A stretch of DNA of 64,000 nucleotides, taken from IMG/VR virus record IMGVR_UViG_3300040801_001224, positions 62,001 through 126,000 of that record. One strand, 5' to 3'. The notes under the pieces are model-generated. The model was given only the letters and a program-made list of their open reading frames with translations. It did no database searches and had not been told where the DNA came from. How positions within the stretch are numbered: position 1 is the stretch's first letter; each line of letters begins with the position of its first letter. A program made the translations under genes and the position numbers. This document shows positions 6,251-62,453 of this stretch, piece after piece.

Positions 6251-8007
6251 TGCTTAAATTTAAAACGTTAACTATTAAGAACTTTATGTCTGTTGGTAAT
6301 ATTACCCAGACTATACAGCTTGACACTGGCGAATTAAACCTTGTACTAGGTGAGAACTTAGACTTAGGTGGTGACGATAACCGGAACGGTGTTGGTAAGT
6401 CGAGTATCCTAAATGCTATTTCATATGTATTATATGATGGCGCATTAACAAAGATACGAAAAGACAACCTCGTCAATAAAACTAATTCTAAAGACATGTA
6501 TGTTACGCTTGACTTTGAAAAAGATGGCACGGAGTATCGATTAGAGCGTGGACGTAAGCCAAACACCTTAAAGTTTTTTATTGATGGAAATGAATTACAA
6601 GAAGATAAGAATGAGGCGCAGGGTGACATGCGTGTCACGCAGACTGTGGTTGAAGAGGTTATCGGAATCAGTCACACAATGTTTAAAAATATTGTTGGTC
6701 TTAATACTAACAGTGAACCGTTCTTGGGTATGCGAGCTAATGACCAGCGTGACGTTATTGAGCAGTTACTTGGCATTACAAAGTTGTCCGAGAAAGCTGA
6801 AAGCCTTAAAATACTATTAAAGAACACAAAGGATTTAATTAAAGACGAAGAGTATCACATTAAAGCTATTAGTGACGCCAACGAAACTATTGAAAAAAAC
6901 ATTAAATCGCTAGATATGAAGTCTAATGTGTGGGTTAAAAATAACGCTGATGACATTGAAAGCACAGAACTTGCTATTGATGAATTAAAGAAAGTAGACA
7001 TTGATGCTGAAATTGAAGCCCATAAACAAGCAGGTTTAGCACAAGAATACCAACGTAAACATAAAGGGTATGATAAAGAAATTAATAGTTTTAAGCGTGA
7101 AATAACCCTATTAGAAAAGGCTATATCACGTTCCGAAGGGCAATTACACACAACTAATGACAAGAAATGCCACACATGTGGACATGCTCTTGATGACGAC
7201 AAACATCAGGAATTACACGAAAAGATAGAAACAGAACATAAGAAAGACAAGGGCAAACTAACTGATGTTAGAGTCCATTTAAACGAAGTTATCAGTAAAC
7301 AGGATGCCCTGGAAGAAGTAGAAATGCCCGAAACTTTCTACGAAACAGTAGACGAAGCGTACTCACATAGAAGCAAAATAGAGTCTTTAACGGCTCATTT
7401 AACAGGCCTTAAGAACGCACAAAACCCTTATGTTGAGCAAATAGAATCACTAAAAGAAGACGGTCTTAAGACTATTGACTACAGTAGTTTAAATGATTTA
7501 GTCATGCTCAGGGACCACCAGGAGTTCTTATTAAGGCTATTGACAAATAAAGATAGCTTTGTGCGTAAGCGTATTATTGATCAAAATCTTAATTATTTAA
7601 ACGCCAGACTTGAACATTACCTAATAAAAGTAGGTTTGCCGCACGAAGTTACGTTTGTTAGTGATTTAAGTGTGGAAATATCAGAGCATGGTCGTAACCT
7701 AGACTTTGATAATTTATCACGCGGTGAAAAGACACGACTTATCCTTAGTTTAAGTTGGGCATTCCGTGATGTATTTGAAAGCTTAAATGGACGTATCAAT
7801 ATACTGTTTATTGACGAGTTAATGGACAACGGTTTAGATACAAGCGGTGTAGAAAATGCCCTACGTGTCCTAAAACATATTACACGTGATCTAAATAAGA
7901 GCATATTCCTAATCTCACATCGTGAAGAACTTATTGGTCGAGTTGATAACATTGTAAAAGTTATTAAGACTGGTGGCTTTACTACTATTGAAGATTATGA
8001 TGAATGA
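6250..8007 (+). CDS. gp46: Recombination ATPase subunit (Rad50/SbcC-like)
   Basis: KNFMS, Walker A NGVGKS, CHTC zinc hook, signature LSRGE, Walker B LFIDE, ISH. Confidence 0.95.
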   Translation: MLKFKTLTIKNFMSVGNITQTIQLDTGELNLVLGENLDLGGDDNRNGVGKSSILNAISYVLYDGALTKIRKDNLVNKTNSKDMYVTLDFEKDGTEYRLERGRKPNTLKFFIDGNELQEDKNEAQGDMRVTQTVVEEVIGISHTMFKNIVGLNTNSEPFLGMRANDQRDVIEQLLGITKLSEKAESLKILLKNTKDLIKDEEYHIKAISDANETIEKNIKSLDMKSNVWVKNNADDIESTELAIDELKKVDIDAEIEAHKQAGLAQEYQRKHKGYDKEINSFKREITLLEKAISRSEGQLHTTNDKKCHTCGHALDDDKHQELHEKIETEHKKDKGKLTDVRVHLNEVISKQDALEEVEMPETFYETVDEAYSHRSKIESLTAHLTGLKNAQNPYVEQIESLKEDGLKTIDYSSLNDLVMLRDHQEFLLRLLTNKDSFVRKRIIDQNLNYLNARLEHYLIKVGLPHEVTFVSDLSVEISEHGRNLDFDNLSRGEKTRLILSLSWAFRDVFESLNGRINILFIDELMDNGLDTSGVENALRVLKHITRDLNKSIFLISHREELIGRVDNIVKVIKTGGFTTIEDYDE

Positions 8008-8044
8008 TATAAATATAGTAGAGGACAATAAGGAAACCGATCTA

Positions 8045-8251
8045 ATGAGCATTAGACCAAATAACTGTGATAGCTGTGGTCGTGTGCCAAGCTTCGTTCA
8101 AGACAGAAATGGGCATTTTGTTATTTGTATTTGCGGAGAACGATCACAGCACATGAAGACAAGAAAAGAATCCATTCTAATGTGGAATCATGACCACACT
8201 GGCTTTAAACAGCCAGAATGGACTAAGGATGCCAATGACCATAACTGGTGA
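8045..8251 (+). CDS. Small Zn-ribbon protein, Lar (restriction alleviation)-like
   Basis: CDSCG...CICG...ESILMWN; likely start MSIRPN after AAGGA. Confidence 0.45.
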   Translation: MSIRPNNCDSCGRVPSFVQDRNGHFVICICGERSQHMKTRKESILMWNHDHTGFKQPEWTKDANDHNW

Positions 8252-8767
8252 TTAGAATTTATACTTAGATTCCCAACCTTCAGTAAGGGCTCTCTTGTTA
8301 GGGAGCCTTTTCTTTTGGATACGTGATATGCTGTACTTCTTTTCTAGTTCCGTTTCCGGCTTTAATTTGAACTTCATGTTAGCGATCATACCATTATAAT
8401 AAGCTGGTGTGCCATCCGGGAGAGTAGCTCTGAGTACGTCTTCAACAATCTGTAATTCTACTTCCCTATAATGTAGTGAAGCTTTGGATTCGTGAAGTGA
8501 TTCAATTAGGAATGTGAATTGTTCTTTTCCCCTCTTTTCAATCTCCTCCTTCAACCATTTGGACGAGCTACAATAAGACTTCCAATCAGATTCCTTGATT
8601 ACACGTTTGCGGTTCTTGCGACCTTTCACTATTTTACGGCGAGTACTGAAGAAGAATTTTTTTCCAATATACTGCATGCCAGTTTCATTATCAATTATTC
8701 GATAGATGAAACCAACCCAATCTTCTATATTAAATTCTCTGGGATATTCCCAATGACCCATATCCAT
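8252..8767 (-). CDS. GIY-YIG nuclease, T4 endonuclease II (DenA)-like
   Basis: GFIYRIIDNETGMQYIGKKFF, ESDWKSYCSSS, REVELQ..DVL, YYNGMI. Confidence 0.75.
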   Translation of the reverse strand: MDMGHWEYPREFNIEDWVGFIYRIIDNETGMQYIGKKFFFSTRRKIVKGRKNRKRVIKESDWKSYCSSSKWLKEEIEKRGKEQFTFLIESLHESKASLHYREVELQIVEDVLRATLPDGTPAYYNGMIANMKFKLKPETELEKKYSISRIQKKRLPNKRALTEGWESKYKF

Positions 8768-8861
8768 ATATTGTATTTATGTGACCAAGAAATAGTGGTG
8801 CTCTGTTCCTGGCACAGATATATACCGGTATAATTACTACAAAAATATTACTAAATAATAC

Positions 8862-8890
8862 TTGACAAAACACATTTTATACCGTATAAT
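8862..8890 (+). promoter_or_regulatory. sigma70-type promoter with no ORF downstream
   Basis: TTGACA (8862-8867), 17 bp, TATAAT (8885-8890). Confidence 0.85.
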
Positions 8891-8896
8891 AGATAT

Positions 8897-9775
8897 ATCA
8901 TAAAAGGAATTCCTGGTTTTATTGTTTCCAGGCCAAAAAAAATTACTCAACGCCCATTCAAAATATATAGACAATTTAAAACGCACTAACAAGTGGCATC
9001 GTGGCAGGAAGGTAAAAGTCCTGCACCTTACGAGGCCGGTACAGGGATGTATGCGGTCGGATGTGTTTGGTAGCCACCTACGTCAGGAACTACGTAGTAA
9101 ATATAAGGACCGACCAACACTACACAAGTAAACCGGCTGAGGAGCCGACAAGAATTGCCACACAGACACAGACAACTGATAACTTGTGTGAGTACTTGAG
9201 TAGATCGAGGTCAGAAAGATTATGCTCTGGCAGAAAAAGAGTTAGGTCCGGCCTAACGCCAACATAGGGCTATATAGCTTTTAGAACTCCAACACAGGGT
9301 TATATAGTTTGCGGCATTTTCCGTCACAACGGAATCGGAGTCACTAATGGGATGATGGTGCCCGCCCAGCGTAGTATTAGCGTTTGTACTGTAGTCGTGG
9401 TGTTATGGAGTGGCACACTGCATTGAAATGTGCTTTTTTTAAACTTCGCCGGCAACGGCGAAGCTATGGCTTCTACAATGAAATGAATAGGTCATTAGGT
9501 CATATGATAAAAATCTTCTTTCCCCTTTAAGTATAATCGAATCTTTAGAACAAAGCCGATAGGCGAAGTGATAAAGATGAAGATTAAGGCCTTTAGGCCT
9601 TTTCACTATTACCCATAATAATGTTAATGACTCTGAACTACTTCGTGTGTTATAGCGCACGATGATGTTCTGATTAAAAATATCAAGACCTTTCAGAGAT
9701 CTTTCCGACAAAAAAAATTGAGTTAAATGGGAATCGTCACCCGGCGATTAAGCCGGGATCAGATTGGCTGAGGAG
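8897..9775 (+). ncRNA. Candidate large structured non-coding RNA (alternatively a replication-origin region)
   Basis: About 0.88 kb with no credible CDS in an otherwise gene-dense genome; many nested inverted repeats, e.g. CTTCGCCG-GCAA-CGGCGAAG at 9444-9463; follows a consensus promoter. Confidence 0.45.
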
Positions 9776-10291
9776 CTATTTCCACTCACGACGTGAGTAT
9801 AATCTTTTGATGTTCTTAGCGAGGTCTTCGTCAGTAATTGCTTCTGCAAAGTCTTTGTTGATATGCATGTTTACAGCGACCACGTCATCACCGACGCTAT
9901 CGAATGAAACGATACCGCTGAATTTCTTGTAAACTGTGGTAATGAAAGCACCTATGCGTAGTTCTAAGCTACCACGGATTTCTTCTTCAAAGTCAAAGGT
10001 GTCTCTTGGCGCATGGGCGATCCATTTGATTTCGCCTTTATTGATTGCCACATATGTGGTTAGTTCATCACCCTTTAGTTGCTTAGTATATATCTTACCA
10101 GTATAGCCTTCAATGTTATAGGCATCATGCTTGACGTTAAATTTATCGTCTGCAAATGGTTGCCATTCAACATGTTGGAAGTCAAACAAGATTGAAGTCT
10201 GTTGTACCTTATTAAACTTTGGGTACTGTGTCCATGCTTCAACACTTGTTTGTGGACTTTTCTCTACTATAATGTCTGTTATGTCTGTCAT
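9776..10291 (-). CDS. Hypothetical protein
   Basis: 171-aa ORF continuing the minus-strand operon; no recognised motif. Confidence 0.6.
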   Translation of the reverse strand: MTDITDIIVEKSPQTSVEAWTQYPKFNKVQQTSILFDFQHVEWQPFADDKFNVKHDAYNIEGYTGKIYTKQLKGDELTTYVAINKGEIKWIAHAPRDTFDFEEEIRGSLELRIGAFITTVYKKFSGIVSFDSVGDDVVAVNMHINKDFAEAITDEDLAKNIKRLYSRREWK

Positions 10292-10294
10292 ATG

Positions 10295-10528
10295 TTAATC
10301 ACCCAATAGTTCAGGTGCTCCACTTTCTATTCGTCTGTATTTACTAACTCTTTTTGCAATTCTCTGCCGTTGCCTAAAACTCATCCCCCATGCATCCGAC
10401 CAACTAATCCTTGCAAAGTAGACTAAATCAATTATCTCATCTTCTAGAGCTAATTGCTCGTCTTTAAAACCATTAATAAACTTAACGATCTTTTCGGGGT
10501 CAGAGTTTACAAGGACTCTGTAAAAAAA
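10295..10528 (-). CDS. -1 frame extension of the gp26-like gene (gp51/GT-chaperone-like C-terminal module)
   Basis: Open frame FFYRVLVNSDPEKIVKF...ISWSDAWGMSFRQRQRIAKRV...LLGD* with no start codon in its first ~50 codons; begins at a T TTT TTT slippery heptamer (10522-10528). Confidence 0.6.
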   Translation of the reverse strand, partial: FFYRVLVNSDPEKIVKFINGFKDEQLALEDEIIDLVYFARISWSDAWGMSFRQRQRIAKRVSKYRRIESGAPELLGD

Positions 10529-11364
10529 GTTGCTGGATTAAAATCAATTGGAACACTCCAGCTATGTTCACAGTTACTACATGTGGCTTCGTAATCTTTC
10601 TTTATGCCAATGTTATTTATTCTATCTAGAACGTCTTGTATTTTTTTAATATCATTACGTCCAATGTTATTTATAAATTCTGCAATTTGTTTATGATTGG
10701 TAACGTCAATCGTCTCTTCTTCAGTAGCACCTTCTTTATAAACTCTCATTACACAATGTGAAACAAGTTCAAAGTTTAGTTTTGATAATGAACTAATTGA
10801 ATCGCCAATAATTTTGATCTTTTGCTCTTCACTAAAGCTAGGATTCTCAATATTACGTATAACATTGTTCTGTTCAAATGCTTTCTTAATAGCAACTAAA
10901 CTGTCGTCAAAGTTATAAGGGCGAATGAACGCTGTCAATCCATTATCCAAATTAACAGGATATTCTGCATCTAGTTTCTCTGCCGATGTTAATGTCATAT
11001 CCATAGATAATGCAAATGAATTATCTTCTCCACACTCTGGACATTTAGCGTTAATATCTAACTCATCACCATAACTAGCGTGGCGTATACCAACTACAAT
11101 TGCGTCAATGTCGTTTGTTAATAAATTGTCAACATTCTTAATTGCTGGCACACAAGATGCGATAACATCTTTAATTGCCTTGCCATTTAATAATGCGTCT
11201 GGATTACGGAATAAAACTTCGTCAGCGGCTGTCATTGGTAAGATACCAACTTCGTCATTACCTGTTAATTCTACAACGCTATCGTCATAAAACTTACCGC
11301 CTGAAGGCAATGAAACGTATAATTGCTCTTTTCTGTAAAACTGTTGTAATGGGTTGTTGCTCAT
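10507..11364 (-). CDS. Baseplate hub assembly protein, gp26-like
   Basis: LPSGGKFY, ILPMTAADE, DIDAIVVGIRHASYG, CPECG and CSNC; likely start MSNNPL at 11364. Confidence 0.75.
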   Translation of the reverse strand: MSNNPLQQFYRKEQLYVSLPSGGKFYDDSVVELTGNDEVGILPMTAADEVLFRNPDALLNGKAIKDVIASCVPAIKNVDNLLTNDIDAIVVGIRHASYGDELDINAKCPECGEDNSFALSMDMTLTSAEKLDAEYPVNLDNGLTAFIRPYNFDDSLVAIKKAFEQNNVIRNIENPSFSEEQKIKIIGDSISSLSKLNFELVSHCVMRVYKEGATEEETIDVTNHKQIAEFINNIGRNDIKKIQDVLDRINNIGIKKDYEATCSNCEHSWSVPIDFNPATFFTESL

Positions 11365-11458: not shown

Positions 11459-13909
11459 ATGGCCGAACAATTTGACCAACGTACAGCAGAAGAGCTAGGC
11501 GATTTAAATAAAAACTTAAAAGAGTTAATAGACAAACTTGGATCTTCTTCTGGTGGAGCCACTAAATCCACGTCTTCTAGTGGTATGTCTGCCCTAGCTA
11601 AAGCCGCAGAAGAAGCGGCCAAGCATACTAATGAAGCTACTGAAGAAAAGAAGAAAGAAACAGAGCAAATCAAAGAGATTCATAGAGAAACAGCCAAGCG
11701 CATTGAAGTTACACGTGACTTAACTGATGAAACCAAGAAGTACTTGGAAGAGCATGGTACGATGACTCAGAAGCTTGCTATGATGAATAATAGTTTTGAT
11801 GAGCAAGCATTGGCTTCAGTCAATAAATCTTTTGCTTCAAACTTGGGTCCATTGGGAAAGGGGTTCGAAGATTTTGCTAAAAATAACGCAGTATTAGGCA
11901 CGTCCATAGCAGTTGCAGGCATTGCTGTTGGTGCTTTCGCTGGCAAGGTAATGAATGTCTTAGAATCATTTGATTCATTAGCCAAGAGTGGTGTAACAGT
12001 GGGTGGCGGTTTTGCAGGACTTATGACTGCGTCGGCAGGCCTAAACATGTCAATGGATCAGTTTGCTAGTTTAGCAACAGAACATGCTAGAACAATTAAT
12101 AAATTTGGCATACAAGAATTCCAAGCAGGAGCATTAGGTATACGTGATAGCATGATGGGGTTAGGTTTAACTACATCTGAAACAAGTGAATACTTAGCTG
12201 ATTACTTGGAAACTCAACGCTTAACAGGTGCGATGGCACAGATGTCTGGAAATCAACAAGCACAGGCGGCACAAAGATTAATGAGTCAGACAGATTCATT
12301 AGCAGTAGCATTCGGTGCGTCTAGGGAGGCGGTACTTGACGGTGTTGTGAAAGCGTATGACGATCCAATGATACAGGCAACACTAAGGGGGCTTCCACAA
12401 GGAGCCAAAGAAGCGTTTGACAAGTCGATGGCATTCTTCAGCGCATCTGTGCCGGCAATGGCTGATAGTATCCAGGAACTAATGGGTTCAGCTATTCCTC
12501 AAATGACCGACGCCTACCAGAACGCAATGCAGGCTGGCGTGCCTGGCGTAGCAACTGCTATGATGGAATTCACTAATAATATTAAAGCTGGCATGGATTC
12601 AGAAGAAGCAAGAAATAAATTGCTCAGCAAAATGGCAACGCAGGATACACATCGTTTAAGAATACTTGCTTCTGCAGGTGACGAAAATGCTAAGTCGATG
12701 TTAGCACAGGTGGAACAAGCAAAGCAGGCAATGGAAGCACGTAAACTTGAGACTGAGGCAGAAAAGAAAGCAAGACTTGAGAATCAGAAATCAGCATCCG
12801 GTGTAAGGCAGGCATTTGAACAATTGGGCACATTTGGTGATAAGGTAATGGCTGGATTGCTTGGGTCTTTAGGTGGATCAGGCGGTGTTGAAGCAGGCGT
12901 TAAGAAATTAAGTGGAGTAGTGTCTGATTTTGCCAACTGGCTAGGTGATACAGCAATCCCTTCAGCAATTAAGTTTGGAGAAGCCATGGGGCCTGTTGTA
13001 TCAGGGTTAGGATTAGTAGGTTCAGCGATTGGATCTGTTTTTGGCGTTTTCCGTGATATTGGTGTTGGTCTTGGTGAAGTTGCTGGCCATATTGTTATGA
13101 ATTTTGACGATATAGGGGAAAACTTTAAACACCTTATTAAGGGAATGGGTCTTGCCTTACTTGATATCTTGCCAACCGGTATGTCAGATGGAATTCTTAG
13201 TTTTTTCAATGGCGTTACTGAGATGTTTTCTGGTGTGTCTAGAGCAATTGATAATCTTATGGATGGCGGTAGTATCATAGGCTTCCTAGGTGAAATGTTT
13301 GATGGGTTGTTGCAGATGGTAACCTACCCAATAACAGCTCTAATTGATTATATTGGTGGCACTGATATTTCAGGTATGTTGTCTGAGTTTGGGTTCACTG
13401 GGATGATAATGGAAGGTATTGGTAATCTGTTTGACAAAATAGTTGACACTATTACTAGTATTGAGTTGCCGTCAGTATCAGACCTCATAGGTGGTGAATG
13501 GCTTGGGTTTGGTGGTAATGAAGAAGCAGACGATAATGCTCGATTAAGAATGTTAGCAAGTGCTGGTGACCTTGACGCAAGGGCACAATTAGAACAGCAA
13601 GATTCACCAGGACTGCTCAATAGAATAGGCAACTTCTTTGGCTCAGACGATCAAGCAGAAGTGTTAAGCCCTGCGGCATCGACAGAATTAGCCACAACAA
13701 GCGAAAAAATAAGCCAAATAACACAAGTGTCGGAAAAACAGGACACTGTTGTGACGGAGCAGATAAATACAAACAGAGAAGTAGTTCAATCATCTGGTGA
13801 ACAAATTGCTGTATTAAGAGAAGTAGCGGCTGGGATTAAATCCCTGGCTGACGGCAATAAGAAGATTACAACTGCTATTAAGGAGAACGGCACAACGTTC
13901 TTACGTTAA
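11459..13909 (+). CDS. Probable tape measure protein
   Basis: 816 aa, Ala/Gly-rich, helical with amphipathic repeats; divergent from the gp26-like chaperone gene and upstream of portal. Confidence 0.65.
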   Translation: MAEQFDQRTAEELGDLNKNLKELIDKLGSSSGGATKSTSSSGMSALAKAAEEAAKHTNEATEEKKKETEQIKEIHRETAKRIEVTRDLTDETKKYLEEHGTMTQKLAMMNNSFDEQALASVNKSFASNLGPLGKGFEDFAKNNAVLGTSIAVAGIAVGAFAGKVMNVLESFDSLAKSGVTVGGGFAGLMTASAGLNMSMDQFASLATEHARTINKFGIQEFQAGALGIRDSMMGLGLTTSETSEYLADYLETQRLTGAMAQMSGNQQAQAAQRLMSQTDSLAVAFGASREAVLDGVVKAYDDPMIQATLRGLPQGAKEAFDKSMAFFSASVPAMADSIQELMGSAIPQMTDAYQNAMQAGVPGVATAMMEFTNNIKAGMDSEEARNKLLSKMATQDTHRLRILASAGDENAKSMLAQVEQAKQAMEARKLETEAEKKARLENQKSASGVRQAFEQLGTFGDKVMAGLLGSLGGSGGVEAGVKKLSGVVSDFANWLGDTAIPSAIKFGEAMGPVVSGLGLVGSAIGSVFGVFRDIGVGLGEVAGHIVMNFDDIGENFKHLIKGMGLALLDILPTGMSDGILSFFNGVTEMFSGVSRAIDNLMDGGSIIGFLGEMFDGLLQMVTYPITALIDYIGGTDISGMLSEFGFTGMIMEGIGNLFDKIVDTITSIELPSVSDLIGGEWLGFGGNEEADDNARLRMLASAGDLDARAQLEQQDSPGLLNRIGNFFGSDDQAEVLSPAASTELATTSEKISQITQVSEKQDTVVTEQINTNREVVQSSGEQIAVLREVAAGIKSLADGNKKITTAIKENGTTFLR

Positions 13910-18605: not shown

Positions 18606-19784
18606 ATGAAAATGACTAAATTATTTGAATCTAACTGGGCAAAAACTAAAGAAGCACTTTTAGAAGGCGTTTCTGGTGCCCGTCGTCAATCTCTTGACGT
18701 TGTGTTTGAAAACACTAAATCACAAATGTTACGTGAATCTGCAAGTGCTGGTGCTACAGCGGCAGGTAACATTGCTACAATTAACAAGGTTATGCTACCA
18801 CTTATTCGTCGTGTAATGCCAACGGTTATTGCTAACGAAATCATGGGTGTACAGCCAATGACTGGTCCAGTAGGCCAGATCCACACATTACGTACTCGTT
18901 ACGCTGACACAGCTGACGGTGTTACTGCTGGTACTGAAGCACTATCTCCATTCGATATTGCTCGTGCTTACTCTGGTAACAACGTTGACGCTGATCCAGC
19001 GGCGGCAGGTACAGCGGCTCTAGAAGGTCGTCCAGGTAAGCGTATGTCTATCCAGATTCTAAAGGAAACTGTAGAAGCTAAGACACGTAAGCTATCTGCA
19101 CGTTGGACTTTCGAAGCGGCACAAGATGCTAATGCTGTTCACGGTATTGACATCGAAGCAGAAATTATGCAAGCTCTAGCTCAAGAAATTACTGTTGAAA
19201 TCGACCAAGAAATGTTAAACAACCTACGTTCACTTTCTGGTGCGGCTCCAGTAACTTATGACCAGGCGGCAGTTTCTGGTACAGCAACTTACGTTGGTGA
19301 CGAACACGCGGCACTAGCTATCATGATTAACGAGCAGGCTAACTTAGTAGCGGCACGTACACGTCGTGGTGCGGCTAACTGGGCTGTTGTTTCTCCAACT
19401 GCTTTAACTATCCTACAGTCAGCGACTACTTCTAGCTTCGCACGTACTACTGAAGGTCAGTTCGAAGCTCCAACTAACACTAAGTTAGCTGGTACATTAA
19501 ACAGCACTATGAAGATCTTCGTAGACCAGTACGCGGCTTCAGACGAAGCAGTACTATTAGGTTACAAAGGTACTACAGAAACAGACGCGGCGGCATTCTA
19601 CTGCCCATACATTCCATTAATGAGCACAGGCCCAGTAATGGATCCACAGACATTCGAGCCAGTTGTTAGCTTCATGACACGTTATGGATACGTAGAGCTT
19701 ACAAACAGCGCGAACTCTCTTGGTAACGCGGCTGATTACTTAAGCAAAGTCGGCATCGACGGCACAACTCTTACATTCTTCTAA
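18606..19784 (+). CDS. gp23: Major capsid protein
   Basis: IMGVQPMTGPVGQI, TVEAKTRKLSARWTFEAAQD, EIDQE, AFYCPYIPL, FMTRYG. Confidence 0.97.
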   Translation: MKMTKLFESNWAKTKEALLEGVSGARRQSLDVVFENTKSQMLRESASAGATAAGNIATINKVMLPLIRRVMPTVIANEIMGVQPMTGPVGQIHTLRTRYADTADGVTAGTEALSPFDIARAYSGNNVDADPAAAGTAALEGRPGKRMSIQILKETVEAKTRKLSARWTFEAAQDANAVHGIDIEAEIMQALAQEITVEIDQEMLNNLRSLSGAAPVTYDQAAVSGTATYVGDEHAALAIMINEQANLVAARTRRGAANWAVVSPTALTILQSATTSSFARTTEGQFEAPTNTKLAGTLNSTMKIFVDQYAASDEAVLLGYKGTTETDAAAFYCPYIPLMSTGPVMDPQTFEPVVSFMTRYGYVELTNSANSLGNAADYLSKVGIDGTTLTFF

Positions 19785-19880: not shown

Positions 19881-21548
19881 ATGAACGAACGAGAACAAAT
19901 TATAGAACTTATCAAACAAAAACCAAAACATGTAACACAAATTATTAAAAGAGATGATCGGTTATCGATGTATGTATCGGATAATAAAAGAGTTAGTTCG
20001 GCTATATACGCAGAAGAAGTGTATTCGGCTATATACCCAGAAACAACGAACATATGTCCTAATAATAACTTAAAAAAGTTTAAATCGATTAAAGCCGGTT
20101 ATGCTTTTTGTGGCAGGGCAAACTCGTGCGAATGCGCTCGAAAGTCTGTGTCAGATAGTGTGTCGGCGAGTAAATCGAAATTTACAGATAACGATATATT
20201 AAATATTAACCGCAAACGAGAAGCAACCAATATAAAAAAATACGGAGTAAGCAATGTTGGACAGACAGCAAAAGCCAAAGCCAATCACCAAGCATATTAC
20301 GCAGACGACAATAATGTGTCTAAAACTGTTAAACAAATCGAACAAACAAAATTAGATAATTGGGGCAATAAGCATTATAATAATAGTCAGCAAATATCCT
20401 CTACCTGGCGGCAAAAGTCAGATAACGAAAAACAAAGAATAACCAAACAACGATTAAAAACGTATGCTGATAAGTATGGAGATAAGTCACTTCACCTTCT
20501 TCAGTCTTGGTATGATAAATTATGTGATTTTTTCGAAACTCACTACGATGTCAGTATGCTAACAAGCAAAGAAGAATACGTGGGTGTAAGTAACCAACAA
20601 TATTACGAGTTTAAGTGTAATAAATGCGAAGCAGAATTTACTACATACATAGATAATGGCCATCCGCCAATTTGTAAAAAATGTAATCCATCTCCTAAGT
20701 CTCAACCAGAACAAGATATACATGATTGGCTTGTAATGCATGGCATAGATCACGAGATGAACAACAAAACTATTTTAGATGGCAAAGAACTTGACATATA
20801 CATACCGGAAAAAAATATAGCAATTGAATATTGCGGTCTATATTGGCATTCGGATTTTCATAGTAGGATTGACAAATGGTATCACTACGACAAATGGAAA
20901 CAATGCCGAGACAAGAACATCCATCTTATAACTATATTCTCAGACCAATGGGTTCATAAGCGTGATATTGTACTTAAACGTCTTGAAACTAAATTAAAGA
21001 TAAATGTTAAATCTATCGGGGCTCGGAAAACACGTATACGCGAACTAACGAACACAGAAGAAAAAGAATTCTTCTTATTTAATCACATACAAGGCTACAA
21101 TCCAAGTAGAGTGGCTTATGGTTTAATAGAAAATGGCGAAATTGTAGCGGCCATGAGTTTTAAAAAGGTAAGATACCATAGCAAAGATTTATCAAAGGAC
21201 GACTGGGAATTACTAAGGTTTGCTTCATGTAAAAATGTGCAAGGCGGTGCAAGTAAACTTTTTAGGCATTTTATTAAAACAGTCGCCCCTTCGAAAATAG
21301 TTAGTTATAGTGATAATGACTGGAATACAGGGGGATTATATGAACAACTAGGGTTTACGTTGTCGAGGATTAGTGGACCATCATACTGGTACGCCAATGT
21401 CAACGATGATATTAGGTATCATCGGTTTAATTTTAGGAAGAAGGACACCGACCCTGACATGCCAGAAAATCAACGTGTATTTGAATCGCATAAATATCTA
21501 AGGTTTTGGGATACAGGCAATACTCGTTGGATATGGCAAGCCAGTTAA
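19881..21548 (+). CDS. Hef-like homing endonuclease (PD-(D/E)xK/Vsr-like nuclease plus GNAT/Mom-like C-terminal domain)
   Basis: CNKC...CKKC Zn ribbon; ELDIYIPEKNIAIEYCGLYWHS; NHIQG, WELLRFAS, GGASKLF, SYSD...GGLYEQLGF; own GATAAATA at 19848-19855. Confidence 0.75.
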   Translation: MNEREQIIELIKQKPKHVTQIIKRDDRLSMYVSDNKRVSSAIYAEEVYSAIYPETTNICPNNNLKKFKSIKAGYAFCGRANSCECARKSVSDSVSASKSKFTDNDILNINRKREATNIKKYGVSNVGQTAKAKANHQAYYADDNNVSKTVKQIEQTKLDNWGNKHYNNSQQISSTWRQKSDNEKQRITKQRLKTYADKYGDKSLHLLQSWYDKLCDFFETHYDVSMLTSKEEYVGVSNQQYYEFKCNKCEAEFTTYIDNGHPPICKKCNPSPKSQPEQDIHDWLVMHGIDHEMNNKTILDGKELDIYIPEKNIAIEYCGLYWHSDFHSRIDKWYHYDKWKQCRDKNIHLITIFSDQWVHKRDIVLKRLETKLKINVKSIGARKTRIRELTNTEEKEFFLFNHIQGYNPSRVAYGLIENGEIVAAMSFKKVRYHSKDLSKDDWELLRFASCKNVQGGASKLFRHFIKTVAPSKIVSYSDNDWNTGGLYEQLGFTLSRISGPSYWYANVNDDIRYHRFNFRKKDTDPDMPENQRVFESHKYLRFWDTGNTRWIWQAS

Positions 21549-25770: not shown

Positions 25771-28700
25771 ATGCCATTGCTCTTACCCTTACGCCTTAAC
25801 ATTGATGGAGAAGCGCCGGATATTGTATTTGGCGGACATTCTAACGACTATCAAATATTTGCAGGCGAAGAAATAGTATTTGGCGGTGAAGCTGAAACGG
25901 GCTTCTCTCAAGGCTACATTCCAAATCCAAACGGCACAGACGAAGACATAGTCTTCGGAGTGTGTATAGAACCATCAGTTGCTTTTGAGAACATAGCAAC
26001 AGCGACTGGTATATCTGTTACGGCAAATATAGGCACTCCAAAGACTAAAAGATTAGTCGTAATCGCTCTTAGCGATGAAGGGGCATATCCTGAAGAGTTC
26101 CAAGGCGATGTATTTGTGGACGGCAAACTTGCTACGCGAATCGCGGTAGCACAAAACACTGCCGGTTTACAAAACCACCAAGAAATGTTTGCTATTCACG
26201 AGGATCAACTTGGCACATCATCAGGGACAGTTAATGTAACATATACGGGTGGCAATGCAGGCTGGGGCATAAGAGCAATGCTATACACTGGTATTAAGAG
26301 TGTTATTCCTTTTGATGTTGGGATTGATAATACAAACATAGGACCGGATTTAGTAACAACAACACTTGATACTCCACCCGGCGGTTTATTAGTTTACGGT
26401 GTTAGTAATGGTTGGGAATTTGAAACTATTGAGTATCCTGCGCCAATAAATAAGAGAAATATTGGCCTTAACGATCCACCAGATTCAGTAAAATTTACGA
26501 TAGGTGACGTAATTGGAACACCTGACGAAACAGACGCAGTGTATACGGCCGATCCAGGACCTCAATTACGCAGTACAGGCATTGCCGCGTCTTGGGAAAG
26601 AGCTAATTGTGATGCTACGGGCTCACCCTCGTTTACAGTCAATATTAATACTCCACCATCAGCCGCAGATCTTTTTGTACGCTTTACTAGAACAGATAAC
26701 TCAACAACAGGAACGGCTGACCGTGTACCTAACAACGGTGGCGTTCACATATTAAAGCTAGACCCATCTGACAATTACGGTCGATATACAGCCTCAGCGC
26801 AAGGTCTTATCACAGCAACCGAATCAGACATGGTTCTTGACACAACTATTGAGCAAGATCCTGGTATTACACGAGTAGGAAATTCAGTAACATTAGCCAA
26901 CACAGGACGTTACTTAGTTCATTATGAAATGGACTTACAGCATTCTTCAGCAAATGATAGAACAGATGCCACAGCGTTTATTGAAGCAAACGGTACAAGA
27001 ATAGATGGCACTAGATCTTATGCGTATATGCGTGGCCTTGATGGCACTAATGACGGCGCATTAACATGGACAGGCATAATTGATATAAATGCTGGAGATT
27101 CAATTACAGTACGACATCAAAAAACTGATGGGCAAGATTCAACAATTAACCCATCTACCACATTCTTGCAGATTTGGGAAATACCTGCCAACGGTGACGA
27201 AGTAATAATGGAAGCCACTACCGGCGATTTCAATGCTAATGGCATATTTACATACGACACGTTACCGCATATAGACACTGACTCATTTACAGCTACCGCC
27301 GGTGGCAATAGCATTACAGTTGATCAGCAAGATCACGTACTATCGTTCGCTACAATGGGTAGATCTACTCAAACAGCACCACGAGCATATCCAGAAGTAC
27401 GTTTTGTTCTTGATGGAACAACACTTGACTACATGTCGGCCGGTGTATACGAACGTGATTCTGGCGGCCAAGCTCTTGCTAATAATGTTGCCGGTATTAT
27501 TCCTTCAGTTGACGCTAATGGTGTTATACAGGTAGAAACTACACAAGCATCAGGACAAGGTGGTACAGTAACTAATACTGAAGGACAGTTTGCGTTACTA
27601 TCGTTAGAGTCTGTATTTGGACCTTATACATATCCACCAACAGCAACATCAAATAGTAGTATTGGTGACTTTTTAATACTTAGTAATAATGGGTTGTCAG
27701 ACGCACTAGGTACTGCCGGAACACTAGATCCGAATTGGGATACAGTGGTAGCACAACAAGGTTCGGTAGGATCATACAACAACGGAAAATTTTCTCTAAG
27801 ACCAGGCAAATATTTAATAATGTATTCAGAGAAGTTTGCGACTCTAAATACGACAAACAATGAACGTTTTGAAATACAAGGTGAGATAGTTCAAGACGGT
27901 GTTGGTGTCATAGGTGGACGTGGATCAGACTATATACGCAAATCTTCTGGACAACAATCATGTATAGTGTCTGGTGCGATGATTGTGGATATTCCTGGTG
28001 AAGATCTACCTGACGACATAATATTTAATGGCGAAGCGGAAACTTCTAATGCTGAAATATTTGATTACGACCCAGTGACAGACAGCATAATATTTAACGG
28101 CGATTCCGGTAACGATACAGAGATTTCTATAGGCTATGATCCAGTAACTGATCCAAATGATAATTTAATTTTCAACGGCTCGGCAGAAACAGGGTTCGAC
28201 CAGATCTATGTACCAAATCCAAATGGCACTGACATAGATATTGTATTTAATGGCACAGCAGTCGTTACATTTGTTGATACATTTGAATATGAACCACATC
28301 CAGGTGATGTAAACATTGTGTTTGGTGGCGATGCTGATGACACAGGCGTGTCATTCGACTTTAATCCTAATCCAAATGGTACTGATGTTGACATTGTGTT
28401 TGATGGAAACGCAGGTGATGATGTAGAAGTAACGTTTATTTACAATACAAATCCAGATGGAACAGATGAAGACTTAATATTTAACGGCAGTGCTGGTGAT
28501 GATGTGGAAGTAACATTCACATATAACCCAAATCCAGATGGAACAGATGAAGACTTAATATTTAACGGCAATGCTGGTGATGATGTTAGCGTATCATTTG
28601 GATATTTGCCTAATCCGAGTGATAATGTTGTAGATATAGTATTTGATGGCAACGCAGGTGATGACGTTGGTATTACTGTTAATATTAATCCAGAAACAGA

Positions 28701-31700
28701 TGCTGGCGGCGATTTAATATTTAATGGCAATGCTGGTGATGATGTAGAAGTAACCTTTACCTATAATCCAAACGAAGATGGAACAGATGAAGATGTTGTG
28801 TTTAACGGCAACTCAGGTGATGATGTTGGTCGTGACTTTGCTTACATTCCAAACCCACAAGGCTTTGACACTGACATTGTATTTGATGGCGGTAGTTCAG
28901 AAACAGGATTCACACAAAATTATAACCCAGAATTCATACTTGGTAGAGATGATGACATTGAATTTGGTGGTGAAGCAGTAGTAGTTGTCGCAGAAGCATT
29001 TGAATGGATACCAAACCCAGTAGACAATAATATTATATTTGATGGTAACTCTGGTGATGATGTTGGCATTGAGTTAGGATTTGATTCTAATCCAGATGGG
29101 ACAATTGTTGATCTAGTATTTAATGGAACAGCGATAACAGAATTTACAGTTAATGTTGATGTTAACCCAGACGGTACAGATGAAGACCTAATATTCAACG
29201 GTAACTCAGGTGATGATGTTGGAGTAACATTCACTGTACTGCCTAATGATGGCGATACAAACGTTACTGACATCGTATTCAATAGCGACACTGACGATAC
29301 AGGTATAACATTTAACTATATTCCAAATCCATTTGATGCAGATATTGATATATTATTTGCAGGTGCTGGCATCCAAGTAGTTACACGAGTCTATGATACG
29401 AATCCAAATGGCACAGACGAAAACATCGTTTTTGATGGCAACTCCGGTGACGACGTTAATATTGAATTAGGGTACATTCCAAATCCAGATTCTACAGATG
29501 AAGACATTGTATTCAATAGTAATACTGACGATACAGGAATTACGTTTAACTATATTCCAAACCCAACTGACAATGATGTTAATATCGTGTTTGCAGGTAA
29601 TGCGAGTCTCGATACAGAAGTAAGTTTGGGATATACACCAAACCCAACTGGAAGCGATCTTGATATAGTATTCAACGGAGAGGCGATAGTCTCGAATTCA
29701 GAAGTTAATGAATGGATACCACATCCGGGTGACATAAACATCGTGTTTAATGATCACGCCATAACAGGATTTGACCAGAACTATATTCCAAATCCAAATG
29801 GCACAGATGAAGATTTAATATTCAATGGTAATGCAGGTGATGATGTTGAAGTAACATTCACATATAATCCAAACGAAGATGGCACAGATGTTGACATCAT
29901 ATTTGATGGAAATGCCGGCGATGACACTGGAATTACAATAAATATTGACCCAGAAACAGGTGCTGGCGGTGACCTAATATTTAACGGTAATGCATCTGAT
30001 GACGTAGAGATAAGCTTAGGATACTTGCCAAACAATGGCAATACTAACGTTGTTGATCTATTATTTAACGATCACGCCGTAACAGGATTTGACCAGAACT
30101 ATATTCCAAATCCAGACGGCACAGATGAAGATCTAATATTTAACGGCAATACTGACGATACAAACGTTATAATTAATATTGATCCTGAAAACGACAACAA
30201 CGGTGACTTAGTATTTAACGGCAACGCAGGTGATGATGTAGGCGTAGAGCTCGGATACATCCCTAATCCAGATGGTACAGATGTAGATGTTGTCTTTAAC
30301 AGTAATACTGACGATACAGGAATTACGTTTAACTATATTCCGAATGCTGATGGTACCGATGAAGACCTAGTATTCAACGGTGAAGCAATTGTCACATTTG
30401 TTAATGTGTACATTTACGAATCACATCCAGGCGTTAACAGTATTCTGTTTAACGGCAATGCTGGAGATGATGTTGGTATTGAATTAGGGTATAACCCTAA
30501 TCCAAATGGTACAGATGAAGACCTAATCTTTAACGGACATGCTGATACACCATTTGTTGTTAACGTTGATCCGGATACTGACGCTAACGGTGATTTGATA
30601 TTTAATGGCAACGCTAGTGATGACGTCGAAGTAACATACAATGTATTGCCTAATGATGGTGACACAAATATCACTGACCTTGTCTTTAATAGTAACACTG
30701 ACGATACAGGAATTACGTTTAATTATGTTCCAAATGCAGATGGCACAACTACTGACATCTTATTTGATGGCAGTACATCGGACATTAGTTTCGATTTCGG
30801 ATGGACACCAGACCCATTTGATGAAAACATAATATTCGACGGTGACCCTACGTTTGGGTTTACACAAAATTATATTCCAAACCCATCGCTTGGACAGACT
30901 GACATTAGGTTCCTTGGCACTGCTATTGTGGAAGTTGACATCGCTGAGAATAACATATTCGAGTACATCCCTAATCCTACTGGAAATGATGTTGATATAA
31001 TATTTAACGGTGAAGCGCAAGTATACACTAACTACTTGCCTAACCCTGACTTAGATATTATTGACATTGAATTTGATGGTGATGCAGAAGTCACAGTATG
31101 CTGGACGGTGGAACCAGAAAACGACAACAACGGTGATTTAGTATTTAACGGTAACGCTGATACTGATTTCGATGACACATTTGAATATATTCCAAATCCA
31201 GATGGCACTACTGTTGACATAGTATTTGATGGTGATGGAACTGCCTCATTCTGCATTAATGTCGATCCTAACCCAGATGGAACAGATGTAGATATAATAT
31301 TTAACGGCCATGCGGATGTGGTTGCTGATATCACATATGTTCCGAATCCAGACGGTACGGATGAAGACATAATATTTAACGGTCATGCTGACACTTCATT
31401 TGGCGATGAGAAAGGCGGACGTGGTGTTAACAAGACAGGTGCAACTAAGTCACCAGCACGTAGAGCAAGAACTCAAAGAATACTTGTACAGCACGAACCA
31501 TCATTAATGAGAGCAGACGCAAAGGTTGGTTTTGCTGGACACGCCGATGCCCAGTTCTACTCAGCGACATGGTCACCATTAGCTCACCCAGATATGGTGG
31601 AGAGCAAATTCTCACTGATCAATACATTAGACGCTCCAAAGAAATCTCTACAGCTTACGGAATCAACTGAAGAGAAGAAGAAACCAAAAGTTGAACTACT

Positions 31701-62078: not shown

Positions 62079-62453
62079 GGCGTTCGGATAAGGGCTGGTA
62101 TCCCGGAGAACTCACTGGCTGAAGAAGCTATAGACCTCCTTAAGTGCCATTGCGTAAAGCATAAATCAGTTCGCCGTTTTAATTCGATGAAGTAATTTAA
62201 TGATACTGTGGACGCCAGTTCGAATCTGGCCATCTCCACCAAATCTATGGGGATGAATTAGGTTTCGACAGGGTATACTGAGAATTATGGAGAATCAGTC
62301 AATGCTAAAGGCTGTGAGGATTGGGAGTAACACCTTTAATGGTGCTCGGTCGAAGAAGCAAAAAAATAATTGAAAATGATGAAATTTTCGCATTAGCGGC
62401 ATAGACCGTTAACGGGGTTTTACACCGTCTTCCTTGTTATCAAAAGACGGTGT
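62079..62453 (+). ncRNA. ssrA: Circularly permuted (two-piece) tmRNA; outer boundaries approximate
   Basis: T-arm GCCAG-TTCGAAT-CTGGC plus CATCTCC-A-CCA ends at 62241; 7-nt spacer; GGGGATG starts at 62249 (G3.U pair); tag ORF ENDEIFALAA* at 62372-62404. Confidence 0.9.
62422..62453. terminator. Hairpin at the tmRNA 3' end, overlapping the convergent gene stop
   Basis: ACACCGTCTT (62422-62431) / AAGACGGTGT (62444-62453). Confidence 0.6.

What the first reader, a model, noticed from the sequence alone, without database searches (positions are those of the whole stretch)
10295..10530. Probable programmed -1 frameshift fusing the gp26-like protein to a hidden gp51/GT-like module
Seen: the gp26-like ORF ends ...ACT TTT TTT ACA GAG TCC TTG TAA. 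The -1 frame opens only three codons before the T TTT TTT heptamer (10522-10528) and stays open for 75 more codons to TAA at 10295. It has no ATG/GTG/TTG in its first ~50 codons, so it cannot easily start independently, yet it exactly fills the gap to the next gene. It encodes ISWSDAWGMSFRQRQRI, reminiscent of gp51 and tail-chaperone GT C-termini. Known: lambda G/GT, P2 E/E' and many other tailed phages make two tail chaperones by a -1 frameshift next to the tape-measure gene, whereas T4 gp26 and gp51 are separate genes. Inference: this T4-like lineage uses the frameshift strategy; the probable tape measure is the adjacent divergent gene. A 6-bp hairpin (10501-10520) follows, though closer than classical stimulators.
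Basis: partly seen in the sequence, partly recalled or inferred. Interest (0 to 1): 0.7.

Follow-up and report, generated by a model that had tools for sequence, protein, structure and literature searches.

The report
Conserved -1 frameshift in jumbo-phage hub gene
A giant T4-like phage, and every sampled relative that has only one copy of this baseplate-hub assembly gene, carries a slippery T-rich site near its end that very probably lets some ribosomes slip back one base and add a conserved 75-residue tail; this two-proteins-from-one-gene trick appears to be unannotated and unreported for this gene family.

Summary
The gp26-like gene (Pfam T4_baseplate) ends ACT TTT TTT ACA GAG TCC TTG TAA. 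The heptamer T_TTT_TTT lies at 10528-10522. The -1 frame opens three codons upstream and runs 75 codons to TAA at 10297-10295, with no start codon before codon 47.

This is not chance. All 143 non-redundant homologous loci in which the tail lies in the -1 frame have a canonical X_XXY_YYZ heptamer in register, 0-10 codons before the hub stop (T_TTT_TTC in 133). These loci include PA5oct, XacN1, Atu_ph07, CBB and 121Q-like coliphages. In 142 of them a homologous 71-81-residue -1 ORF under purifying selection follows.

In the seven distinct loci where the tail is in frame, the genome always carries two tandem hub paralogs, one short and one long. This state arose at least twice. Both isoforms therefore seem to be needed, as with lambda G/GT.

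The best reading is programmed -1 ribosomal frameshifting in a hub-assembly chaperone gene (confidence 0.85; no product was detected). The tape-measure identity of the neighbouring gene is plausible but unproven. No database record or paper found describes this. It is a new member of a known kind.

The parts
10507..11364 (-). Zero-frame gene for the short isoform (285 aa): a gp26-like baseplate-hub protein with two CxxC pairs (C108/C111, C262/C265).
   Evidence: Pfam PF12322 T4_baseplate, E 2.4e-23, above the cut-off; phrog_150 'baseplate hub', E 4.9e-28. It is 44% identical to the PA5oct 'baseplate hub'. It is the only PF12322 match in the complete genome.
10522..10528 (-). Slippery heptamer T_TTT_TTT (zero frame AC-T TTT TTT-ACA), four codons before the zero-frame stop.
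   Evidence: Read directly. An X_XXY_YYZ heptamer sits in the same register in 143 of 143 non-redundant frameshift-type loci: T_TTT_TTC 133, T_TTT_TTT 4, T_TTT_TTA 3, A_AAT_TTT 3. Heptamers of the form H_HH.U_UU.Y are among the most efficient in E. coli (PMC4066793).
10295..10522 (-). The -1 frame extension: 75 codons (YRVLVNSDPEK...ISWSDAWGMSFRQRQRI...ELLGD) plus TAA. The long isoform would be hub residues 1-281 plus 75, that is 356 aa.
   Evidence: The frame is open and has no canonical start before codon 47. The profile of 65 homologs finds it in the own genome at E 2e-19. That profile has 837 cluster representatives in the 1.84-billion-protein library. Substitutions by codon position are 417:240:986.
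10501..10520 (-). 6-bp hairpin (CAGAGT / ACTCTG, 8-nt loop) starting 1 nt after the heptamer and enclosing the zero-frame stop.
   Evidence: MFE and centroid folds. The spacer is shorter than the usual 5-9 nt, and the hairpin is not conserved in relatives.
10466..10492 (-). Second, 11-bp A/U-rich hairpin, 29 nt downstream of the heptamer; a possible stimulator.
   Evidence: MFE and centroid folds. Its role is inferred only.
11459..13909 (+). Divergently transcribed 816-aa gene: a candidate tape-measure or virion structural protein.
   Evidence: It matches no Pfam or PHROG family. It is 21-22% identical (E 2e-11) to the syntenic PA5oct 797-aa virion protein and to the L088 782-aa protein. The CBB counterpart CBB_251 was detected in virions with 29 peptides. 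Similarity to T4 gp29 is not significant.
9776..10291 (-). Next gene downstream (171 aa, unknown function). Its ATG lies 3 nt after the extension's stop.
   Evidence: the ORF listing; no Pfam or PHROG family.

Best explanation
The single gp26-family (T4_baseplate) gene of this 328-kb jumbo myovirus makes two proteins. Most ribosomes terminate at TAA 10509-10507 and give a 285-aa short form. A fraction slip back one base, with the tRNA-Phe pair on T_TTT_TTT (10528-10522). They then read TAC AGA GTC... in the -1 frame and give a 356-aa long form that carries a conserved, mostly helical 75-residue C-terminal domain. By analogy with T4 gp26, which is listed as a hub assembly chaperone, and with lambda G/GT, the two isoforms probably act together, in a set ratio, in assembly of the central hub and tape-measure part of the tail. 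What is shown: the sequence signal, its conservation at nucleotide level, protein-level selection on the -1 ORF, collinearity with natural in-frame fusions, and the strict alternative of one frameshift gene or two paralogous genes. What is inferred: that ribosomes actually shift, at what rate, and what the extension binds.
For: (1) The site and the ORF are exactly as described.
(2) 168 loci were classified with HMMs: 159 have one hub gene with the extension in the -1 frame, 8 (7 distinct) have the extension in frame, and 1 is unclear.
(3) All 143 non-redundant frameshift-type loci carry an X_XXY_YYZ heptamer in register, 0-10 codons before the stop, and 142 have a 71-81-codon -1 ORF.
(4) There is nucleotide-level constraint beyond the conserved Phe-Phe. 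The preceding codon ends in T in all 140 T-type loci whatever its amino acid (AAT, AGT, GAT, ACT, CAT, TCT, GCT, GTT, GGT), against 34% T at third positions elsewhere. The first Phe codon is TTT in 140 of 140, against 74% elsewhere. The second is TTC in 133 of 140, against 26% elsewhere.
(5) Three loci use A_AAT_TTT instead, with the frame relation kept.
(6) U_UU.U_UU.Y and A_AA.U_UU.U belong to the most efficient class of heptamers in E. coli (PMC4066793).
(7) Conservation in the -1 frame starts at the first post-slip codon (R 81%, L 83% at +4, I 83% at +12), while there are 66 different zero-frame tails. Substitutions by codon position are 417:240:986.
(8) There is no conserved start. The -1 frame is usually closed 3 codons upstream, and annotated starts in named phages fall at inconsistent points inside the conserved RxxLLxxxPEE stretch.
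(9) Natural in-frame long forms of 319-351 aa join at ...F-R-x-K/R-L-I..., exactly where the heptamer sits, and have no heptamer.
(10) All in-frame loci carry a second, short hub paralog. No frameshift locus does. The two-gene state arose at least twice.
(11) The 50 nt downstream of the site fold more stably than other windows of the same gene (-10.5 against -6.3 kcal/mol, Wilcoxon p 1e-14; 52% fall in the lowest decile).
(12) The own genome has one hub gene and one extension, abutting at the heptamer.
(13) An AF2 model of a natural long form is confident (pLDDT 92, pTM 0.89), with the extension as a folded helical domain.
Against: There is no direct evidence of the trans-frame protein: no MS, ribosome profiling or reporter data. 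No single conserved downstream stimulatory structure was found. In the window the nearest hairpin starts only 1 nt after the heptamer. T_TTT_TTT, the window's variant, is also a run on which RNA polymerase can slip. One locus (L022) has only an 11-codon -1 ORF. T4 itself, the type member of the family, has neither the heptamer nor the extension. The chaperone role and any G/GT-like ratio control are inferred from T4 and lambda literature, not tested.
Confidence: 0.85

Rival explanations
1. Transcriptional slippage: RNA polymerase inserts an extra U on the T run, so a fraction of mRNAs carry the extension in frame. The protein product would be the same (..FF-YR..).
For: The window has seven T's in a row. 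UUUUUUU is noted as prone to transcriptional slippage (PMC4066793). Protein sequence alone cannot separate the two routes.
Against: 133 of 143 loci have only six T's followed by C, and three have A_AAT_TTT with five T's. From general knowledge, these are short for efficient polymerase slippage. The run is always in the tandem-tRNA register X_XXY_YYZ, which polymerase slippage does not require. The TTC preference at the A-site codon (133 of 140, against 26% elsewhere) fits the measured U_UUC > U_UUU ribosomal hierarchy and shortens the homopolymer. Downstream RNA stability is enriched.
Confidence: 0.07
2. The extension is a separate small gene, translated on its own by a non-canonical start or by reinitiation after the hub stop. 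It is not fused to the hub protein.
For: Gene callers and GenBank records annotate it as a separate 58-70-aa 'hypothetical protein' (XacN1 ORF316, CBB gp249, BF17, Kaldavass, Turkey5, Vibrio 2.275.O). Most library hits are 55-98-aa ORF calls. In some lineages the -1 frame is open 9-50 codons upstream.
Against: The window has no ATG/GTG/TTG before codon 47. Annotated starts fall at different positions inside the conserved N-terminal motif. Conservation begins at the first codon after the heptamer, upstream of the hub stop. The heptamer itself is conserved at synonymous sites. In the two-gene lineages the domain is covalently fused at exactly this junction.
Confidence: 0.05
3. Artefact or decay: a sequencing or assembly indel in the homopolymer, or a pseudogenised C-terminus.
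For: Homopolymers are error-prone, and the window comes from a metagenome.
Against: The same frame relation holds in 143 non-redundant loci and in at least ten named, independently sequenced phage genomes. Independent per-run contigs agree at the T7 run. The -1 ORF is under purifying selection.
Confidence: 0.01

Closest known systems
Lambda G/GT and the conserved -1 frameshift of tail assembly chaperone genes (Levin 1993; Xu, Hendrix, Duda 2004, 2013; as summarised in PMC5009743)
   Same: A canonical heptamer lies a few codons before the stop of a tail-assembly gene. The long product shares the N-terminus and gains a domain of about 75 aa that has no start of its own. Both forms seem to be required: here this is shown by the strict alternative of one frameshift gene or a short plus a long paralog. 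The gene sits next to a large candidate tape-measure gene.
   Different: The gene family is different: T4_baseplate/gp26, about 285 aa with a four-Cys site, not a Pfam TAC family. The gene is divergent from the candidate tape-measure gene, not immediately upstream on the same strand. The heptamer is T_TTT_TTY. The TAC fold was not reproducibly detected. Binding partners are unknown.
T4 gp26 / gp26' (baseplate hub assembly chaperone, PF12322)
   Same: The zero-frame protein is homologous (Pfam E 2.4e-23), and both share the two CxxC pairs and a C-terminal Phe-Phe. T4 also makes two products from gene 26: the record annotates 26 and an internal 26'.
   Different: T4 gene 26 ends GAG TTC TTT GAG TTA CTA TAA with no slippery heptamer. 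Gene 25 starts on its stop, so there is no extension. T4's second product is a C-terminal fragment that shares the C-terminus, not an extended form that shares the N-terminus.
T7 gene 10A/10B
   Same: A -1 shift on a ..U_UUC-type site (G_GU.U_UU.C; X_XX given in PMC5009743) close to the zero-frame stop yields a minor C-terminally extended structural-gene product.
   Different: That is a capsid protein, the family is unrelated, and the first triplet of the T7 site is non-canonical.
T4 gp51 (hub assembly protein)
   Same: Both are linked to hub assembly, and gene 51 lies beside gene 26 in T4.
   Different: No detectable sequence relation to the extension (hhalign probability 2.4%).

Membership tests
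Programmed -1 ribosomal frameshift cassette (X_XXY_YYZ type) | Canonical slippery heptamer in zero-frame register | tested here: met
   T_TTT_TTT at 10528-10522. In register in 143 of 143 non-redundant frameshift-type loci.
Programmed -1 ribosomal frameshift cassette (X_XXY_YYZ type) | Long -1 ORF from the site, without a conserved initiation codon of its own | tested here: met
   75 codons, with the first canonical start at codon 47. 71-81 codons in 142 of 143 loci. The first ATG falls anywhere from codon 1 to none at all.
Programmed -1 ribosomal frameshift cassette (X_XXY_YYZ type) | Heptamer conserved at synonymous positions across divergent homologs | tested here: met
   The preceding codon ends in T in 140 of 140 loci (34% expected). 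The first Phe codon is TTT in 140 of 140 (74% elsewhere). The second is TTC in 133 of 140 (26% elsewhere).
Programmed -1 ribosomal frameshift cassette (X_XXY_YYZ type) | Downstream stimulatory RNA structure at a suitable spacing | tested here: inconclusive
   Downstream windows are more stable than own-gene controls (p 1e-14) and than shuffles (mean z -1.4 against -0.18). No common structure was found. The window's first hairpin has a 1-nt spacer.
Programmed -1 ribosomal frameshift cassette (X_XXY_YYZ type) | Trans-frame protein actually made | not testable with these tools
   No proteomic or ribosome-profiling data were reachable. RNA runs were held only as contigs with low shares.
Tail assembly chaperone pair (lambda G/GT type) | Two products with a common N-terminus, both required | tested here: met
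   Met at sequence level only. The choice is one frameshift gene (159 loci) or a short plus a long paralog (8 loci), never a long form alone. The two-gene state arose at least twice.
Tail assembly chaperone pair (lambda G/GT type) | Gene lies immediately upstream of the tape-measure gene on the same strand | tested here: not met
   The 816-aa candidate is adjacent but divergent, and its tape-measure identity is unproven.
Tail assembly chaperone pair (lambda G/GT type) | TAC fold or TAC sequence family | tested here: inconclusive
Tail assembly chaperone pair (lambda G/GT type) | Binds the tape measure (common part) and the tail tube (extension); absent from virions | not tested
   No gp19-family tube gene was recognised in the own genome, so no complex prediction was sent. 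T4 gp26 is tabulated as a chaperone (PMC3004832).
T4 gp26 baseplate hub family (PF12322) | Profile match above Pfam's gathering score over most of the model | tested here: met
   83.4 bits against a cut-off of 24.5; model positions 15-218 of 219.
T4 gp51 | Sequence or profile similarity of the extension to gp51 | tested here: not met
   hhalign probability 2.4%, over 26 columns.

The most novel reading that the evidence does not exclude
The gp26/T4_baseplate family is the long-sought tail-assembly-chaperone equivalent of T4-like and jumbo myoviruses. On this reading the short form coats the tape measure or hub core. The rare frameshift form uses its 75-residue helical domain to recruit the next assembly partner (tube-initiator or hub proteins), as the T part of lambda gpGT does. 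Lineages can swap recoding for gene duplication and back. This would extend the 'conserved frameshift in tail assembly genes' rule to a group thought to lack it, and would assign a mechanism to the poorly understood T4 gp26.
Probability: 0.35. Interest if true: 0.78.

Novelty: new member of a known kind. Interest (0 to 1): 0.64.

Why it matters
Programmed -1 frameshifting in tail-assembly genes is a hallmark of lambda-, P2- and Mu-like phages. It had not been tied to the T4-type hub gene 26 family.

Here it appears as a deeply conserved recoding signal across a very large radiation of jumbo myoviruses. The extension profile finds 837 protein clusters (50% identity level) in the 1.84-billion-protein library. 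The named phages checked (PA5oct, PAC2, XacN1, Atu_ph07, CBB, Kaldavass, the coliphages BF17 and Turkey5, Vibrio phage 2.275.O) all show it. Public records either leave the extension unannotated or call it a separate hypothetical protein truncated at an arbitrary start.

Recognising the frameshift would correct those annotations and define a new conserved domain. It also offers a natural comparison of recoding against duplication, which argues that both isoforms are needed. And it gives a testable handle on what gp26-type hub chaperones do in tail assembly.

Tried and rejected
- Near-identical DNA search of phage records: no match.
- gp51 likeness: hhalign probability 2.4%; rejected.
- Extension against Pfam, PHROGs and PDB sequences: nothing.
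- Hub protein against PDB sequences: nothing.
- Foldseek of the long-form model against the PDB: no hit at E 0.001 or better.
- Tape-measure identity of the 816-aa gene: no family hit. The word-based homolog search returned only the protein itself. BLASTP against T4 gp29 gave only short weak segments. Only synteny, size and virion detection of the syntenic PA5oct and CBB proteins support it.
- A single conserved stimulatory hairpin: not found; only a general excess of stability.
- RNA-level test of polymerase slippage: only low-share Logan contigs of unrelated RNA runs were available; not pursued.
- Tail tube (PF06841) in the own genome, as a partner for a complex prediction: not found.
- tRNAs and Rfam families in the 8.8-9.8 kb gap: none.
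- Literature: nine full-text searches found no description of a frameshift in gp26-family or jumbo-phage hub genes. The genome papers of PA5oct, MIJ3, XacN1, Atu_ph07, CBB and phAPEC6 contain no occurrence of 'frameshift'. The held part of the 2016 recoding review has no 'baseplate'.

Full report
**What is in the window.**
On the minus strand a 285-codon gene runs from ATG 11364 to TAA 10509-10507. It is a clear member of the T4 gp26 family: Pfam T4_baseplate PF12322 at E 2.4e-23, 83 bits against a cut-off of 24.5; phrog_150 'baseplate hub' at E 4.9e-28.

Its last codons are CCA GCA ACT TTT TTT ACA GAG TCC TTG TAA. The seven T's (10528-10522) form T_TTT_TTT in zero-frame register. The -1 frame carries a TAA at 10540-10538 and is then open from 10537 to TAA 10297-10295. 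A -1 slip on the heptamer continues with TAC (10522-10520) and 75 codons in all. This gives ...PATFF-YRVLVNSDPEK...ISWSDAWGMSFRQRQRI...ELLGD, a long form of 356 aa.

The first ATG/GTG/TTG in this stretch is codon 47. The next gene starts 3 nt after the extension's stop. A second, 11-bp A/U-rich hairpin lies at 10492-10466.

**Source.**
The window is positions 62001-126000 of a complete 328,096-bp virus record with direct terminal repeats. It comes from a microbial-mat metagenome. Contigs assembled separately from two runs of that sample cross the T run without an indel. The whole genome has one T4_baseplate match (window 10522-11253) and one match to the extension profile (window 10313-10519). 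They abut at the heptamer.

**Relatives.**
tblastn places the gene among jumbo myoviruses. These include PA5oct-like Pseudomonas phages (44% identity), Atu_ph07, Phosso, XacN1, Vibrio phage 2.275.O, CBB, GAP32, Serratia phage BF and 121Q-like (Asteriusvirus) coliphages.

Read by eye, PA5oct ends AGT TTT TTC AGA.., Atu_ph07 ends CAT TTT TTC GCA TGA and XacN1 ends GCT TTT TTT ATT... Each is in the same register and is followed by an open, recognisably homologous -1 ORF of 73-79 codons. The same holds for CBB, BF17, Turkey5, Kaldavass and Vibrio 2.275.O.

None of these records annotates a join. The extension is either unannotated (PA5oct) or called as a separate 58-70-aa hypothetical protein. The chosen starts fall at different places inside the conserved RxxLLxxxPEE stretch.

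**Wide comparison.**
Two scans of IMG/VR gave 160 loci. With the annotated phage loci and the window, 168 loci were classified with HMMs of the hub and of the extension:
- 159 have a single hub gene with the extension in the -1 frame.
- 8 (7 distinct) have it in frame.
- 1 is unclear.

Among 143 non-redundant frameshift-type loci, every one has a canonical X_XXY_YYZ heptamer in register, 0-10 codons before the hub stop: T_TTT_TTC 133, T_TTT_TTT 4, T_TTT_TTA 3, A_AAT_TTT 3. In 142 of them the -1 ORF is 71-81 codons long.

The Phe-Phe dipeptide is conserved even in T4. The nucleotides are constrained beyond that:
- The preceding codon ends in T in all 140 T-type loci whatever its amino acid, against 34% T at third positions elsewhere in these genes.
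- The first Phe codon is TTT in 140 of 140 (74% elsewhere).
- The second is TTC in 133 of 140 (26% elsewhere).

In E. coli, H_HH.U_UU.Y heptamers are among the most efficient. The tetramer order is A_AAG >> U_UUC > U_UUU (PMC4066793). The preferred sequence is thus the efficient one.

**The -1 ORF codes for protein and is read from the heptamer.**
A profile of 65 extensions finds 837 representatives (E 0.001 or better) among 1.84 billion cluster representatives. Differences between close pairs fall 417:240:986 on codon positions 1:2:3 of the -1 frame.

Conservation starts at the very first post-slip codon: R 81%, L 83% at +4, I 83% at +12. This stretch lies upstream of the zero-frame stop in most loci. 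The zero-frame tails, in contrast, come in 66 different versions. The -1 frame is typically closed three codons upstream of the heptamer, and there is no conserved start. Independent initiation therefore cannot explain the conserved N-terminal part.

**Natural fusions and the two-gene alternative.**
About two dozen of the best 150 library hits are 319-351-aa proteins with the extension at their very C-terminus. In these the join reads ...F-R-x-K/R-L-I..., collinear with the predicted trans-frame product ...F-F-R-x-x-L-L... There is no heptamer in the DNA.

Every locus with such an in-frame long form also carries a second, short hub paralog next to it, without an extension. Most of these short paralogs lack a heptamer. 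No frameshift-type locus has two hub genes. One such contig (L088, 327 kb) is syntenic with the window: portal, a 782-aa gene, short hub, long hub, SegE-type endonuclease, gp46-like.

A maximum-likelihood tree nests the paralogs among frameshift lineages and needs at least two origins of the two-gene state. These phages make a short and a long form either by recoding or by duplication, which is what is expected if both are needed.

**RNA context.**
The 60 nt after the heptamer fold better than shuffles (mean z -1.40 against -0.18 for a control window; 41% below -2). A 50-nt window starting 4 nt after the site is more stable than other windows of the same gene (-10.5 against -6.3 kcal/mol; p 1e-14). 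No shared structure emerged, so a stimulator is likely but lineage-specific. In four non-redundant loci the zero-frame stop directly follows the heptamer.

**What the proteins are.**
T4 gp26 is tabulated as a hub assembly chaperone, with conflicting data on whether it is in the hub (PMC3004832). T4 gene 26 itself ends GAG TTC TTT GAG TTA CTA TAA and is overlapped by the start of gene 25, so it has neither signal nor extension.

AF2 models are confident: a natural long form at pLDDT 92, pTM 0.89, and the window's short form at pLDDT 89, pTM 0.83. The extension forms four helices (255-265, 268-296, 302-306 and 310-330). No solved structure matches by Foldseek.

The extension has no Pfam, PHROG or PDB relative and is unrelated to T4 gp51 (hhalign 2.4%).

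The divergent 816-aa neighbour is weakly homologous to the syntenic proteins of PA5oct and L088 (E 2e-11). The PA5oct protein carries an ESI-MS/MS note, and the CBB counterpart was found in virions with 29 peptides. PA5oct's 136-nm tail (PMC3936114 abstract) over 797 aa gives about 0.17 nm per residue. From my own knowledge, T4 gp29 gives a similar figure. This fits a tape measure but does not prove it, and similarity to gp29 is not significant.

**Verdict.**
The best explanation is a programmed -1 ribosomal frameshift that produces a minor, C-terminally extended isoform of a gp26-type hub assembly protein (confidence 0.85).

Polymerase slippage on the T run is the main rival (0.07). The six-T and A_AAT_TTT variants, the strict tRNA register and the TTC preference speak against it.

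Separate translation of the extension (0.05) and artefact (0.01) are poorly compatible with the data.

It works like lambda G/GT. Membership in the TAC family is not established.

I found no record or paper describing it. It is a new member of a known kind, of moderate to high interest to people who work on recoding and phage assembly.

Noticed in passing
window 62181-62404 (+): A permuted tmRNA gene (Rfam RF04321, 95.6 bits against a gathering score of 47) encoded by this jumbo phage genome.
   Followed up: no
window ~8830-9775: About 950 nt with no ORF above 90 aa, no tRNA and no Rfam family. It lies between a SegE-type GIY-YIG endonuclease gene (8252-8767, minus; PF19835, E 7e-36) and the 171-aa gene downstream of the extension. 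Its nature is unknown (a decayed gene, an uncatalogued RNA or a regulatory region).
   Followed up: partly
window 19881-21548 (+): A 555-aa HNH/homing-endonuclease-like ORF (phrog_3339, E 1e-92) directly after the major head protein gene (18606-19784). Together with the SegE gene, this shows mobile endonucleases inserted in the structural module.
   Followed up: no
L087:793-2744: In this two-gene locus the short hub paralog still ends TCT TTT TTC AAT GAC TAA, an intact T_TTT_TTC heptamer, and the long paralog lies in its -1 frame. A slip there would fuse the two paralogs. This may be a relic of the ancestral signal or a third way of making a long product.
   Followed up: partly
L022 (IMGVR_UViG_3300010885_020795), heptamer at ~2825: The only frameshift-type locus whose -1 ORF stops after 11 codons. 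It may be an assembly error or a lineage that lost the extension.
   Followed up: no
window 25771-31887 (+): A 2038-aa ORF downstream of the head module; not examined.
   Followed up: no
L084 (T4) 7803-8429 minus: T4 keeps the C-terminal Phe-Phe of the family (..KEFFELL*) but encodes it as TTC TTT, which is non-slippery. T4 makes its second gene-26 product (26') from an internal part of the gene instead (the record annotates 26' over the last 288 nt of gene 26).
   Followed up: partly
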